Shown piece after piece: positions 3,970 through 44,740 of a DNA stretch of 58,495 nucleotides. A program made the translations under genes and the position numbers. Every line of letters begins with the position of its first letter. Positions within the stretch are counted from its first letter, which is position 1. Source of the stretch: Octopus bimaculoides (Eukaryota). The notes beneath the pieces were generated by a model that worked only from the letters and a program-made list of their open reading frames with translations, made no database searches and was not told the DNA's origin. The stretch is from contig NC_068987.1 in assembly GCF_001194135.2 (NCBI RefSeq), forward strand, positions 19,828,132 through 19,886,626, in the 5' to 3' direction.

Positions 3970-4581
3970 CCCTTTCGTTACCATATTTCTGTTCAAATAC
4001 ACCCTCTTTATTTAAATAAATTTTAAAAATAAAGAATTTACTAAAATATCTTGGTCAATATGAGCACAGGAGTGGCTGTGTGGTAAGTAGCTTGCTTACC
4101 AACCACATGGTTCCGGGTTCAGTCCCACTGCGGAGTATCTTGGGCAAGTGTCTTCTACTATAGCCTAGGGCCGACCAATGCCTTGTGAGTGGATCTGGTA
4201 GACGGAAACTGAAGGAAGTCCGTCATATATATGTATATATATATATGTATTGTGTGTATATGTTTGTGTGTCTGTGTTTGTCCCCCCCACCATTGCTTGA
4301 CAACTGACGGTGGTGTGTTTACGTCCCCGTAACTTAGTGGTTCGGCAAAAGAGACCGATTGAATAAGTACTGGGCTGACGAAGAATAAGTCCTGGGTGCG
4401 ATTTGCTTGACTAAAGGCGGTGCTCCAGCATGGCCGCAGTCAAATGACTGAAACAAGTAAAAGAGTAAATTACTAGGCTGGTAATTGGGGCATAAATTAA
4501 CATGTAAGCTTAATGGGAAATTTTCATTTAGATCACCTTAATATAAGAAGTTTGTATCATAGAAGATTGGCATCAAAAGAA
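3970..4581 (+). mobile_element. piggyBac-type MITE (TTAA-flanked), split by a SINE A insertion
   Basis: TTAA|CCCTTTCGTTACCATATTTCTG at 3966; body resumes at 4470 and ends ...ATCAAAAGAA|TTAA at 4582-4585; collinear with the copy at 4650-5197. Confidence 0.7.
4061..4469 (+). mobile_element. SINE family A, full length (about 410 bp)
   Basis: tRNA-like A box TGGCTGTGTGG and B box GGTTCAGTCC, CORE-like CTTGGGCAAGTG, internal (TA)n/(TG)n, 3' tail GACTGAAACAAGTAAAAGAGTAAA. Confidence 0.92.
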
Positions 4582-8815: not shown

Positions 8816-9339
8816 AGGTGCAGGAGTGGCTGTGTGGTAAGTAGCTTGCTTACCAGCCACATGGTTCTGGTTTCAGTCCCACTGCGTCGCACCTTGGGCA
8901 AGTGTCTTCTACTATAGCCTCGGGCCGACCAAAGCCTTGTGAGTGGATTTGGTGGACGGAAACTGAAAGAAGCTTGTCATANNNNNNNNNNNNNNNNNNN
9001 NNNNNNNNNNNNNNNNNNNNNNNNNNNNNNNNNNNNNNNNNNNNNNNNNNNNNNNNNNNNNNNNNNNNNNNNNNNNNNNNNNNNNNNNNNNNNNNNNNNN
9101 NNNNNNNNNNNAAAGAGTATATACATATATATGTATGTGTGTATATGTTTGTGTGTCTGTGTTTGTCCCCCCAACATCGCTTGACAACCGATGCTGGTGT
9201 GTTTACGTCCCCATAACTTAGCAGTTCGGCAAAAGAGACCGATAGAATAAGTCCTGGGGTCGATTTGCTCGACTAAAGGAGGTGCTCCAGCATGGCCACA
9301 GTCAAATGACTGAAACAAGTAAAAGAGTAAAAAAAGAGT
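8816..9339 (+). mobile_element. SINE family A, full length, with an N gap at the internal microsatellite
   Basis: Head, CORE-like motif and tail all match 4061-4469. Confidence 0.92.
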
Positions 9340-38863: not shown

Positions 38864-38894
<31 letters not shown>

Positions 38895-39087
38895 TTGTCC
38901 CCCCCAACATCGCTTACCAACCGATGCTGGTGTGTTCATGTCCCCGTAACTTAGCAGTTCGGCAAAAGAGACCAATAGAATAAGTACTAGGCTTCCAAAG
39001 AATAAGTCCTGGGGTCGATTTGCTCGACTAAAGGCAGTGCTCCAGCATGGCCACAGTCAAAAGACTGAAACAAGTAAAGAGTAAAGG
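38692..39087 (+). mobile_element. Young SINE family A, full length
   Basis: Near-identical to 19866-20320. Confidence 0.93.
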
Positions 39088-39777: not shown

Positions 39778-40074
39778 TCTCTTTATTCTTTTACCCTTTT
39801 ACTTGTTTCAGTCATTTGACTGCGGCCATGCTGGAGCACCGCCTTTAGTCGAGCAAATCGACCCCAGGACTTATTCTTTGTAAGCCTAGTACTTATTCTA
39901 TTGGTCTCTTTTGCCGAACCGCTAAGTTACGGGGACGTAAACACACTACCATCGGTTATCAAGCGATGTTGGGGGGACAAACACAGACACACAAACATAT
40001 ACACACACATACATATATATATATACATATATACAACGGGCTTCTTTCAGTTTCCGTCTACCAAATCCACTCAC
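39778..40074 (-). mobile_element. Young SINE family A running into a gap
   Basis: Reverse complement of tail and core. Confidence 0.9.
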
Positions 40075-40714
40075 NNNNNNNNNNNNNNNNNNNNNNNNNN
40101 NNNNNNNNNNNNNNNNNNNNNNNNNNNNNNNNNNNNNNNNNNNNNNNNNNNNNNNNNNNNNNNNNNNNNNNNNNNNNNNNNNNNNNNNNNNNNNNNNNNN
40201 NNNNNNNNNNNNNNNNNNNNNNNNNNNNNNNNNNNNNNNNNNNNNNNNNNNNNNNNNNNNNNNNNNNNNNNNNNNNNNNNNNNNNNNNNNNNNNNNNNNN
40301 NNNNNNNNNNNNNNNNNNNNNNNNNNNNNNNNNNNNNNNNNNNNNNNNNNNNNNNNNNNNNNNNNNNNNNNNNNNNNNNNNNNNNNNNNNNNNNNNNNNN
40401 NNNNNNNNNNNNNNNNNNNNNNNNNNNNNNNNNNNNNNNNNNNNNNNNNNNNNNNNNNNNNNNNNNNNNNNNNNNNNNNNNNNNNNNNNNNNNNNNNNNN
40501 NNNNNNNNNNNNNNNNNNNNNNNNNNNNNNNNNNNNNNNNNNNNNNNNNNNNNNNNNNNNNNNNNNNNNNNNNNNNNNNNNNNNNNNNNNNNNNNNNNNN
40601 NNNNNNNNNNNNNNNNNNNNNNNNNNNNNNNNNNNNNNNNNNNNNNNNNNNNNNNNNNNNNNNNNNNNNNNNNNNNNNNNNNNNNNNNNNNNNNNNNNNN
40701 NNNNNNNNNNNNNN

Positions 40715-41040
40715 TGGTTTGGCATCTGCAGACTAGACTAGTTTCAGGGTGTTGCCCCTTGTCAATGCAGAGCAGCCAAGCCTTAGCCAGGCGGCGCTGC
40801 TGACTATCTGCTCGAAGGTTATTTATCTAATTTCAGTGGAATCTATCCACTGGTTTTCAGAAATAGAGTTATTAATATTTCTGTGTGTTTAAGACACTGC
40901 TGACCTCCCCTGTTCGAAGGTTATAAAGGACACAGGTTTCGTGTGTCACATAGCTAGCTAGAGGCGATGGCTTCTTGGAGCTAATTCACGGCAGCTTTCG
41001 TCCTAATTTTGGGACTGCCATGTTGGCTTGGCGATAACTA
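40715..41040 (-). mobile_element. Hammerhead-bearing short element related to the 30273-30701 foldback
   Basis: Starts at the (TA)n edge with TAGTTATCGCCAAGCCAACATGGCAGTCCCAA versus TAGTTGTATACTGCCAACTTAACATGACAGTCCCAA at 30273. Confidence 0.7.
40725..40771 (-). ncRNA. Type I hammerhead-like motif with a U3-A8 core variant
   Basis: Minus strand: TCTGCA TTGACAA GGGG CAACA CCCT GAAA CTA GTC TAG TC TGCAGA; perfect 6-bp stem I, 4-bp stem II (G.U at 10.1/11.1), 4-bp stem III with a 3-nt loop, GUC triplet ending 40731. Confidence 0.8.
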
Positions 41041-41064
41041 TTAATATATATATATATTTGTATA

Positions 41065-41120
<56 letters not shown>

Positions 41121-41489
41121 TATATCTGTGAACATGAGTATGTTTAGGTATGTGTTTGGTTAGCTGTATGAAGTTGTATACATATGTCTATGTGTATGCT
41201 GTGGCGTATATTTGCATATAATTTATAATCGTTCTTTCGTGTGTGTTTGCATGTGTGCACGTCTATTCTTTAGCTCCAGGGCAACATTGACACTGGCAGA
41301 GCACAGTTATGACCTATCAAGGCTGACTTGTGGTTAAACACCAGCGCAGATGCACCCATACACACACACACACAACATACACATACACACACACACATTA
41401 ATGTTTGTTTTATGTCAAGTTATATATAAAGAATAATTTAGCATTAAACTGAAAGATTGATCTATACTTTTTAGTAAAATAACATTCTT

Positions 41490-42299
41490 TTATTCTTCTA
41501 CTTGTTTCAATCATTAGACTGTGGCCATGCTGGGGCACCACCTTGTGGAATTTTTTAATCAAACGAATCGACCTCAGAATTTTTGTTTTTTTAAGCCTTA
41601 CTCTATAGGTTTCTTTTGCTGAACCGCTCAGTTACATGGGCATAAACACATCGACACTGGTTGTCAAGCAATGGTGGGGGACAAACACACACACACATTG
41701 GTATTAAGAAGGGCATCCAGCCATAGAAACCGTGCCAAATCAGACTGGAACCTGGTGCAGCATACCAGTTCCAGTCAAACTTTTTAACCCATGCCAGCAT
41801 GGANNNNNNNNNNNNNNNNNNNNNNNNNNNNNNNNNNNNNNNNNNNNNNNNNNNNNNNNNNNNNNNNNNNNNNNNNNNNNNNNNNNNNNNNNNNNNNNNA
41901 TATATATACAATAGTCTTCTTTCCATTTACCAAATCTACTCATAAGGCTTTGGTCAGTCTGAGGTTATAGTAGAAGATACTTGCCCAAGGTGCCATGCAG
42001 AGGGACTGAACCCAGAACCATGTGACTGAGAAGAAACTTCTTATTTCTTTATTGCCCACAAGGGGCTAAACATAGAGGGGACAAACAAGGACAGACAAAA
42101 GGATTAAATCGATGACATCGACTACAGTACGCAACTGGTACTTAATTTATTGACCCCGAAAAGATGAAAGGCAAAGTCGACCTCAGCGGAATTTGAACTC
42201 GGAATATAAAGACAGATGAAATACCGCTAAGCATTTCGCCCGGCATGCTAACATTTCTGCCAGCTCGCCGCCATACCACACAGCTGTATCTGTGCCTAT
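41490..42299. mobile_element. Nested set: SINE A (-) interrupted by SINE D tail (+, 41700-41803) and SINE C (-, 42045-42275)
   Basis: The family A head resumes at 42276 (ACCACACAGCTG...GTGCCTA) after the C insertion. Confidence 0.8.
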
Positions 42300-42327: not shown

Positions 42328-42374
42328 AAAGTAACTTCGAAGTTTCAGCTTGCTTTTTGCCTTCATCAGACTCT
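42328..42374 (-). ncRNA. Type I hammerhead-like motif with complete core and weak stem II
   Basis: Minus strand: AGAGT CTGATGA AGGCAAAAAGCAAGCT GAAA CTTCGAAG TT ACTTT; 5-bp stem I (one G.U), 10-nt palindrome ACTTCGAAGT as stem III, GUU triplet. Confidence 0.62.
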
Positions 42375-44374: not shown

Positions 44375-44740
44375 AAAAGCTTGCTTCCTAACCACATGGT
44401 TCCAAGTTCAGTCTCAGTGCATGGTACCTTGGGCAAGTGTCTTCTACTATAGCCTCAGACTGACCTGTGAGCCTTGTGAGTGGATGTGGTAGATGGAAAC
44501 TGAAAGAAGATTATCGCGCGTGTGTGTGTGTTTGTCCCCCACCACTGCTTGACAACCAGTATTGATATGTTTAAGTGCTTGTAACTAAGCAATTCAGCAA
44601 AAGAGGCCAATAAAATAAGTACCAAGCTTAACAAAAAAAAAAGTACTGGGGTCAATTCATTTGACTAAAAATTCTTCAAGGCAGTGCCCCAGTATGGTCA
44701 CAGTTTAATGACTGAAGCAAGTAAAAGATAAAAGATGAAA
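44375..44740 (+). mobile_element. SINE family A, decayed, near full length
   Basis: Head from AAGCTTGCTTCCTAACCACATGG to tail GACTGAAGCAAGTAAAAGATAAAAG. Confidence 0.85.

What the first reader, a model, noticed from the sequence alone, without database searches (positions are those of the whole stretch)
40725..40771. Hammerhead with a covarying U3-A8 core and a duplication that may make it self-sufficient
Seen: the minus strand folds as TCTGCA-TTGACAA-GGGG(CAACA)CCCT-GAAA-CTA(GTC)TAG-TC|TGCAGA, with every invariant core base present except that C3 and G8 are jointly replaced by U3 and A8. Established: positions 3 and 8 form a Watson-Crick pair in the active hammerhead, and U3-A8 is a known tolerated swap. 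Penelope-associated minimal hammerheads have short palindromic stem III and cleave as dimers. Inference: stem III looks like an ancestral palindrome ACTAGT plus a 5-nt tandem duplication (CTAGT x2), giving 4 bp and a triloop that could fold as a monomer. Stem I is perfect only with the second GUC.
Basis: partly seen in the sequence, partly recalled or inferred. Interest (0 to 1): 0.85.

Follow-up and report, generated by a model that had tools for sequence, protein, structure and literature searches.

The report
Lone hammerhead ribozyme motif, known U3-A8 variant
The minus strand at 40719-40779 really does carry a complete type-I hammerhead self-cleaving RNA motif of the kind that animal retroelements scatter through genomes, but its unusual U3-A8 core pair is already documented in nature, and nothing here shows that it is active or that its small duplication lets it work alone.

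Summary
On the minus strand, 40771-40725 reads UCUGCA/UUGACAA/GGGG(CAACA)CCCU/GAAA/CUA(GUC)UAG/UC|UGCAGA. The cut site would lie between 40731 and 40730. An extra outer helix (40775-40779 with 40719-40723) extends the motif to about 61 nt.

A strict descriptor is expected about 0.002-0.003 times per window by chance, before stem III and the outer helix are counted. The motif is therefore very probably hammerhead-derived.

Several points count against a strong reading:
- No Rfam hammerhead model reports it, even at E<=10 on an 81-nt query.
- No paralog could be found, so "covariation" cannot be shown from this one copy.
- A 640-N assembly gap starts 5 nt beyond the motif's outer helix (11 nt past the cut site).

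Natural U3-A8 hammerheads were reported in 2011, and in 2014 (about 1,300 copies) in Schistosoma Penelope-like elements.

The 5-nt duplication is plausible. In nearest-neighbour energies, however, stem III adds only -0.4 kcal/mol to the monomer, while the duplication improves the dimer gain from -6.4 to -10.3 kcal/mol.

The architecture (6-bp helix I, 4-bp helix II) resembles canonical or retrozyme-type hammerheads more than Penelope minimal ones. No retroelement ORF is nearby.

Verdict: a new member of a known kind, of modest interest.

The parts
40775..40779 (-). Outer helix of stem I, 5' strand (UUGGC)
   Evidence: Pairs with 40719-40723 in the MFE and in the hammerhead fold.
40772..40774 (-). 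Internal loop in stem I, 5' side (UGC); opposite a single U at 40724
   Evidence: It sits where the Rfam HH9 consensus has UAC/UAC and motif B has UAC/UGC. A role in tertiary contact is inference.
40766..40771 (-). Stem I, 5' strand (UCUGCA)
   Evidence: 6/6 Watson-Crick pairs with 40725-40730; pair probabilities 0.84-1.0.
40759..40765 (-). Core box U3 U4 G5 A6 C7 A8 A9 (UUGACAA instead of CUGANGA)
   Evidence: U3 (40765) and A8 (40760) replace C3 and G8.
40746..40758 (-). Stem II GGGG/CCCU with loop CAACA; the 10.1-11.1 pair is G.U
   Evidence: A competing register (AGGG/CCCU) is preferred in the MFE.
40743..40745 (-). Core G12 A13 A14
40732..40742 (-). Stem III A15.1-CUA (GUC) UAG-U16.1; contains the 5-nt direct repeat CTAGT x2
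   Evidence: Adds -0.4 kcal/mol and has about 10% occupancy. In a dimer it forms 5+5 bp around a U.U mismatch.
40731..40731 (-). C17; predicted scissile bond is 3' of this base (40731|40730)
   Evidence: Position follows from the fold. Cleavage was not tested.
40725..40730 (-). Stem I, 3' strand (UGCAGA)
40719..40723 (-). Outer helix of stem I, 3' strand (GCCAA)
40075..40714 (.). 640-N assembly gap immediately downstream of the motif on the minus strand
   Evidence: It hides whatever follows the ribozyme, for example a tandem copy.

Best explanation
A solitary genomic copy of a metazoan type-I hammerhead ribozyme motif, left by a hammerhead-bearing retroelement (a non-LTR retrozyme or Penelope-related lineage). 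It carries the already documented U3-A8 version of the C3-G8 core pair. If the minus strand is transcribed, the RNA would fold into helices I (6 bp plus an outer helix), II (4 bp) and III, and would cut itself 3' of C17 (40731|40730) by the usual internal transesterification. Helix III is thermodynamically marginal in one molecule but strong between two. Cleavage, if any, is therefore more likely slow or dimer-dependent (two transcripts or tandem copies) than efficient in a lone monomer. Shown: the sequence, the fold and its improbability by chance. Inferred: the retroelement origin, transcription and catalytic activity.
For: The full core and three helices are at the stated coordinates. Chance expectation is 0.002-0.003 per window for stems I and II plus the core alone. 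There are further unforced features: 4-bp stem III, an outer helix and a loop II beginning CAA. The layout is the same as the Rfam HH9 consensus and as a second motif in this window, B at 30418-30491(-), which scores 24.5 bits on HH9. The genome therefore carries canonical type-I hammerheads. All stems are intact, unlike B, which has mismatches in stem I. Natural U3-A8 hammerheads exist, and such cores cleave in vitro (PMC3088659; PMC4209133). A weak base of helix II is tolerated in axolotl HHR_Amex2 (PMC7229834). A related large genome (giant squid) has 235 Rfam Hammerhead_1 hits (PMC6962438). Dimer prediction: -51.1 versus 2 x -20.4 kcal/mol.
Against: No Rfam hammerhead model reports it at E<=10, even on 81 nt. 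G10.1.U11.1 departs from a highly conserved pair. The hammerhead fold is 4.3 kcal/mol above the MFE, and the folding z-score is only -1.2. It is a single copy in the window, with no flanking retroelement ORF by eye. No second hammerhead is visible that could release a unit-length RNA. Primary-sequence similarity to the HH9 consensus is weak (z = 2.0). There are no expression or cleavage data.
Confidence: 0.6

Rival explanations
1. Dead relic: a copy of an ordinary C3-G8 hammerhead that picked up independent transitions (C3>U, G8>A at what would have been a C7pG8 CpG, C11.1>U) plus a slippage duplication. It no longer cleaves, and the apparent compensation is luck plus ascertainment.
For: All three departures from the consensus are transitions, and G8>A fits CpG decay (inference). 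Rfam models give nothing. It is a solitary copy beside SINEs and microsatellites. With thousands of decaying copies per genome, a few would hit positions 3 and 8 together by chance (my estimate: about 0.3% of copies with three hits).
Against: Every change preserves pairing, and stems I, II, III and the outer helix have no mismatch. The neighbouring motif B shows what decay looks like (mismatches in stem I). Given three random hits in about 46 constrained positions, the 3+8 double is expected in about 0.3% of cases (analytic estimate).
Confidence: 0.22
2. One reading: the 5-nt duplication lengthened helix III so that this copy cleaves efficiently as a monomer, freeing it from the need for a tandem partner.
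For: Deleting one CUAGU unit leaves ACUAGU, which cannot form an intramolecular hairpin. The present sequence can form 4 bp plus a triloop. Invertebrate retrozyme hammerheads with 2 bp plus a tetraloop do cleave as monomers (PMC7229834).
Against: Stem III adds only -0.4 kcal/mol and is about 10% occupied. The same duplication strengthens the dimer more (ddG -10.3 versus -6.4 kcal/mol). Because CUAG is its own reverse complement, the two arms of such a hairpin are necessarily identical, so part of the 'duplication' signal follows from the hairpin itself.
Confidence: 0.1
3. Chance resemblance: an AT-rich eukaryotic scaffold happens to contain a hammerhead-like pattern with no evolutionary link to ribozymes.
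For: The descriptor had to be relaxed (U3-A8, G.U). A strict descriptor would still give roughly 100 chance hits in a 2-3 Gb genome (extrapolated). Motif C at 42328-42374 shows that such chance-like hits occur here. No CM support.
Against: The per-window expectation is 0.002-0.003 before stem III and the outer helix, and about 1e-5 after them (plus my analytic factor). The architecture parallels HH9 and B beyond what the descriptor forces.
Confidence: 0.08

Closest known systems
Canonical metazoan type-I hammerheads of non-LTR retrozymes / satellite repeats (newt, Schistosoma, coral, mussel, axolotl; Rfam HH9-like layout)
   Same: Type-I topology; 6-bp helix I followed by an internal loop and an outer helix; 4-bp helix II with an A-rich loop starting CAA; GAAAC; GUC cleavage triplet; helix III built on a short palindrome (ACUAGU). 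Local GC is 46% in the 329-bp unique segment. Sources: PMC4209133, PMC7229834, HH9 consensus.
   Different: U3-A8 instead of C3-G8; G.U at 10.1-11.1; loop II one base shorter; the 3' side of the stem I internal loop is reduced to one U; no tandem repeat is visible (a gap follows); below every Rfam threshold.
Minimal hammerheads of Penelope-like elements (Cervera & de la Pena 2014; Lunse et al. 2017)
   Same: Dispersed single copies are common. The U3-A8 core covariation was described in this group (about 1,300 hits in S. mansoni). Helix III is palindromic and cleavage is as dimers.
   Different: [quoted passage not shown] This motif has none of these. No PLE ORF or pLTR context is seen.
Natural U3-A8 core variants reported by Perreault et al. 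2011
   Same: The same compensatory replacement of the C3-G8 core pair. Such cores were reported active in vitro.
   Different: Most hammerheads in that collection come from bacteria, phages and metagenomes and have other architectures. Here the context is an animal genome and a type-I canonical layout.

Membership tests
Hammerhead ribozyme (type I) | Invariant core U4 G5 A6 A9, G12 A13 A14, A15.1-U16.1, H17 | tested here: met
   All present at 40764-40762, 40759, 40745-40743, 40742/40732, 40731.
Hammerhead ribozyme (type I) | C3-G8 core pair | tested here: not met
   U3 (40765) and A8 (40760). This is isosteric and is a documented natural covariation (PMC3088659; PMC4209133), but it is not the consensus.
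Hammerhead ribozyme (type I) | Three helices around the core, helix I open, helices II and III capped | tested here: met
   Helix I 6 bp plus 4-5 bp outer helix; helix II 4 bp; helix III 4 bp with triloop.
Hammerhead ribozyme (type I) | G10.1-C11.1 closing pair of helix II | tested here: not met
   G10.1 (40758) faces U11.1 (40746), a wobble.
Hammerhead ribozyme (type I) | Score at or above the gathering threshold of an Rfam hammerhead covariance model | tested here: not met
   No hit at gathering score. No hammerhead hit at E<=10 on 301 nt or 81 nt. Motif B in the same window reaches 24.5 bits on HH9, against a gathering score of 52.
Hammerhead ribozyme (type I) | Site-specific self-cleavage giving 2',3'-cyclic phosphate and 5'-OH ends | not testable with these tools
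   Needs in vitro transcription or end mapping.
Hammerhead ribozyme (type I) | Loop II / stem I tertiary contact elements | tested here: inconclusive
   Loop II is CAACA (consensus CAAAAA). The stem I internal loop is UGC/U (consensus UAC/UAC), so the match is only partial.
Penelope-like element minimal hammerhead | Lies in a pLTR next to an RT + GIY-YIG ORF, or in recognisable PLE remnants | tested here: inconclusive
   No ORF of 70 aa or more looked like a retroelement protein by eye. They were not searched against any protein library. One flank is a 640-N gap, and truncated solo copies are common in the literature.
Penelope-like element minimal hammerhead | [quoted passage not shown] | tested here: not met
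   No bulge is needed; helix II is 4 bp; helix III is 4 bp plus triloop.
Metazoan non-LTR retrozyme | Tandem repeats of about 150-450 bp, each with a type-I hammerhead | tested here: inconclusive
   Only one copy is visible. The 329-bp unique segment 40715-41043 ends at the gap, where a collapsed repeat could lie. There is a hammerhead-like fragment 40996-41015, about 250 nt upstream, but it lacks the CUGANGA box.
Metazoan non-LTR retrozyme | Expressed as small circular RNA | not testable with these tools
   No transcriptome data are available.

The most novel reading that the evidence does not exclude
A 5-nt slippage duplication inside the palindromic helix III acted as a natural switch that changed how this hammerhead assembles. 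It either made a dimer-obligate ribozyme monomer-competent or, as the energies suggest, locked two copies into a much tighter double hammerhead. This happened in a lineage that runs on the rare U3-A8 core and is invisible to standard Rfam annotation.
Probability: 0.1. Interest if true: 0.45.

Novelty: new member of a known kind. Interest (0 to 1): 0.25.

Why it matters
If the motif is active, it adds an animal example of the U3-A8 hammerhead core in a canonical type-I frame. It also shows that standard covariance-model annotation misses such copies, since no Rfam hit appears even at E<=10. The duplication offers a simple natural test of how helix III length sets the monomer/dimer requirement. 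None of this changes current understanding of hammerheads or their retroelement hosts.

Tried and rejected
- Rfam at gathering score and at E<=10 on the whole window, 301 nt and 81 nt found no hammerhead hit for this motif.
- Paralog hunt inside the window (3-mismatch pattern, blastn, blastn-short) found only the motif itself.
- A protein-word search with the 51-aa frame across the flank found no candidate. The 37-aa frame across the motif itself was too short for the tool.
- An attempt to identify the source record through a window ORF returned 'not on record', so the organism stays unidentified. My impression of a cephalopod-like draft scaffold, from the SINE and microsatellite content, is memory only.
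- I considered building my own covariance model from the HH9 consensus plus B. MAFFT mis-aligned the 3' half, and a 1-2 sequence model would add nothing beyond Rfam's own HH9, so I dropped it.
- Motif C (42328-42374) as a partner hammerhead is rejected, because a 17-bp hairpin swallows its stem II, GAAA and stem I.
- Fragment 40996-41015 as an upstream tandem hammerhead is rejected, because it has no CUGANGA box and no stem I.
- tRNA or SINE-head origin: ARAGORN found no tRNA.
- Lunse et al. 2017 could not be read.

Full report
**Setting**

The window is a draft eukaryotic scaffold. It has 18 runs of N (10-640 nt), about 35% G+C, abundant TA/CA microsatellites and many copies of a roughly 200-nt SINE-like repeat. 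No ORF of 70 aa or more looked like a real protein or a retroelement enzyme by eye; these ORFs were not searched against any protein library. I could not identify the organism. A look-up of a window ORF was not on record, and the prokaryote, virus and metagenome collections hold nothing related.

**Check of the observation**

The minus strand reads ...UUGGC UGC UCUGCA UUGACAA GGGG CAACA CCCU GAAA CUA GUC UAG U C|UGCAGA U GCCAA ACCA, followed by a 640-N gap.

U3 is 40765, A8 is 40760, C17 is 40731, and the predicted cut is 40731|40730.
- Stem I is a perfect 6 bp only in the register of the second GUC.
- Stem I continues beyond a small asymmetric internal loop (UGC opposite U) into a 4-5 bp outer helix (40775-40779 with 40719-40723). 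The whole element is therefore about 61 nt.

**Is it more than chance?**

I wrote a type-I descriptor that accepts C3-G8 or U3-A8, G.U pairs and any helix III up to 14 nt.

| Descriptor | Expected hits per window | Source |
|---|---|---|
| Relaxed | 0.05 | 300 dinucleotide shuffles |
| Medium | 0.02 | 300 dinucleotide shuffles |
| Strict (stem I >= 6, stem II >= 4) | 0.003 | 300 dinucleotide shuffles |
| Strict | 0.002 (1 hit in 50 Mb) | Markov-random sequence |

The candidate also has three further helix III pairs and the outer helix. My analytic estimate for requiring these is a factor of about 0.0035. That gives roughly 1e-5 per window, or on the order of one chance hit or fewer in a 2-3 Gb genome.

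The candidate also shares the layout of the Rfam HH9 consensus: outer helix, 3-nt internal loop, 6-bp helix I, core, 4-bp helix II with a CAA-rich loop, GAAAC, capped helix III, UC. I conclude that the motif is very probably derived from a real hammerhead. The primary-sequence similarity to the HH9 consensus alone is weak (z = 2.0; z = 3.0 against motif B).

**Negative evidence**

- No Rfam family is matched at gathering score.
- No hammerhead family is reported at E<=10 on 301 nt or on an 81-nt query centred on the motif. From motif B's score and E-value, that corresponds to roughly less than 8-9 bits. This is understandable, because the models penalise U3, A8 and U11.1 independently. It still means that library-based membership fails.
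- Thermodynamically the motif is unremarkable. The MFE is -19.3 kcal/mol with z = -1.2.
- The hammerhead fold is -16.1 against an MFE of -20.4 kcal/mol. The MFE uses a GAC/GUC extension of stem I and a shifted helix II.

**The U3-A8 pair**

Natural covariation of C3-G8 to U3-A8 was reported by Perreault et al. 2011, who also state that such cores had been shown active in vitro (PMC3088659). Cervera and de la Pena 2014 found about 1,300 U3-A8 minimal hammerheads in Schistosoma mansoni, starting from the Cercyon Penelope-like element (PMC4209133). The feature is therefore known.

Whether it "covaries" here cannot be decided from one sequence.

- For selection, or descent from a functional U3-A8 lineage: all three departures from consensus (C3U, G8A, C11.1U) preserve pairing. 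No stem has a mismatch, whereas the canonical-core motif B in the same window has mismatches in stem I. Given three random hits among about 46 constrained positions, the 3+8 double is expected in about 0.3% of cases (my estimate).
- Against: all three changes are transitions, and G8>A would be a CpG decay if the ancestor had C7-G8. In addition, ascertainment favours noticing exactly the compensated copies.

**The duplication**

CTAGTCTAGTCT is 12 nt of period 5. Removing one unit gives GAAACUAGUC|UGCAGA, that is helix III = ACUAGU. This is the short palindromic helix III described as typical of metazoan type-I hammerheads, so a slippage duplication is a reasonable reading. One caveat applies. 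CUAG is its own reverse complement, so the two arms of such a hairpin are necessarily identical, and part of the direct-repeat signal follows from the hairpin.

The functional claim is not supported by the energy model.

| Quantity | Value |
|---|---|
| Contribution of intramolecular stem III | -0.4 kcal/mol (-16.1 vs -15.7) |
| Occupancy of stem III | about 10% |
| Dimer gain with the duplication | -10.3 kcal/mol (-51.1 vs 2 x -20.4) |
| Dimer gain with one unit deleted | -6.4 kcal/mol; does not use helix III |

Two copies form the classical double hammerhead, with an intermolecular helix III of 5+5 bp around one U.U mismatch. The duplication therefore helps the dimer at least as much as the monomer. 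Invertebrate retrozyme hammerheads with 2 bp plus a tetraloop already cleave well as monomers (PMC7229834), so monomer competence would not be unusual anyway.

**Context**

The 329 bp between the gap and a (TA)n tract (40715-41043) are unique in the window. They have 46% G+C and fold somewhat better than shuffles (z = -3.7), but the fold is not rod-like.

No second hammerhead is visible that could excise a unit-length RNA.

- A fragment at 40996-41015 (GUCC-CAAAAUUA-GGAC-GAAA) looks like helix II plus GAAA of a canonical hammerhead, but it lacks the CUGANGA box and stem I.
- The descriptor hit C at 42328-42374 is absorbed by a 17-bp hairpin.

The gap starts 11 nt after the cut site and could hide tandem copies. 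Assignment to a retrozyme array or to a Penelope pLTR therefore remains inference. The 6-bp helix I / 4-bp helix II architecture fits the canonical/retrozyme type better than the PLE minimal type, which has an extra nucleotide after A9, a helix II of about 6 bp and a G10.1-C11.1 pair.

**Mechanism proposed**

A minus-strand transcript folds into the three-way junction. U3-A8 replaces the C3-G8 pair that positions G8 near the scissile phosphate. G12 and the 2'-OH of residue 8 would act as in other hammerheads (established chemistry, not tested here). Cleavage occurs 3' of C17. Given the marginal helix III, the G.U pair at the base of helix II and the reduced stem I loop, I expect slow cleavage and/or a need for a second copy.

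| Reading | Confidence |
|---|---|
| Hammerhead-derived retroelement motif that may still cleave | about 0.6 |
| Dead relic | about 0.22 |
| Pure chance | about 0.08 |

**Verdict**

This is a genuine-looking but ordinary hammerhead copy carrying a known core variant. It is a new member of a known kind and of modest interest. The useful by-product is the observation that this window holds at least one further hammerhead (B) inside a striking 430-bp quasi-palindrome.

Noticed in passing
window 30418-30491 (-), within 30273-30701: A second type-I hammerhead with a canonical core (CUGAUGA, helix II UGAG/CUCA, loop CAAAGA, GAAAC, palindromic helix III ACAUGU, UAC stem I loop). It scores 24.5 bits on Rfam HH9 (gathering 52; E = 2.7e-4 on 161 nt) and has mismatches in stem I. 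It sits at the apex of a 430-bp quasi-palindrome whose roughly 150-bp arms are almost perfectly complementary (MFE -333 kcal/mol, z = -36). The centre holds a decayed mirror copy on the other strand. It could be a foldback or inverted-duplicate retroelement fragment.
   Followed up: partly
window 42328-42374 (-): A hammerhead-like descriptor hit: CUGAUGA plus a bulged A, weak helix II, fully palindromic helix III CUUCGAAG, U17. It lies 1.6 kb from the finding on the same strand. A 17-bp hairpin (CAAAAAGCAAGCUGAAA / UUUCAGCCUUGCUUUUUG) competes with the fold, so it is probably coincidental.
   Followed up: yes
window 40996-41015 (-): GUCC-CAAAAUUA-GGAC-GAAA closely resembles helix II, loop II and GAAA of canonical animal hammerheads. 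It lies about 250 nt upstream of the finding on the same strand, but has no CUGANGA box or stem I. It may be a remnant or a coincidence.
   Followed up: partly
window 40808-40822 and 40910-40924: A 15-nt direct repeat (14/15 identical), which extends to about 33 nt of similarity, spaced 102 nt apart just upstream of the hammerhead on the minus strand. This hints at an internal partial duplication in the 329-bp unique segment.
   Followed up: no
window 41484-41700 and at least 12 other sites (e.g. 44520-44735, 39785-39993, 4265-4469, 9150-9335, 38881-39085): A dispersed SINE-like repeat of about 200 nt, 66-81% identical between copies and in both orientations. Two inverted copies at 18588-18803 produce a spurious 90-bit sub-threshold match to plant MIR841.
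   Followed up: partly
window 26860-27446, 29368-29749, 32762-33213: A repeated unit whose translation recurs (…PPAQEPVQR.WQR.RSN…), seen in several frames and places. It is likely a minisatellite or another interspersed repeat rather than a gene.
   Followed up: no
window 40075-40714 and 17 other N runs: The scaffold has 18 assembly gaps, many flanked by microsatellites. One begins 5 nt past the hammerhead's outer helix, so the downstream context of the finding is unknown.
   Followed up: yes
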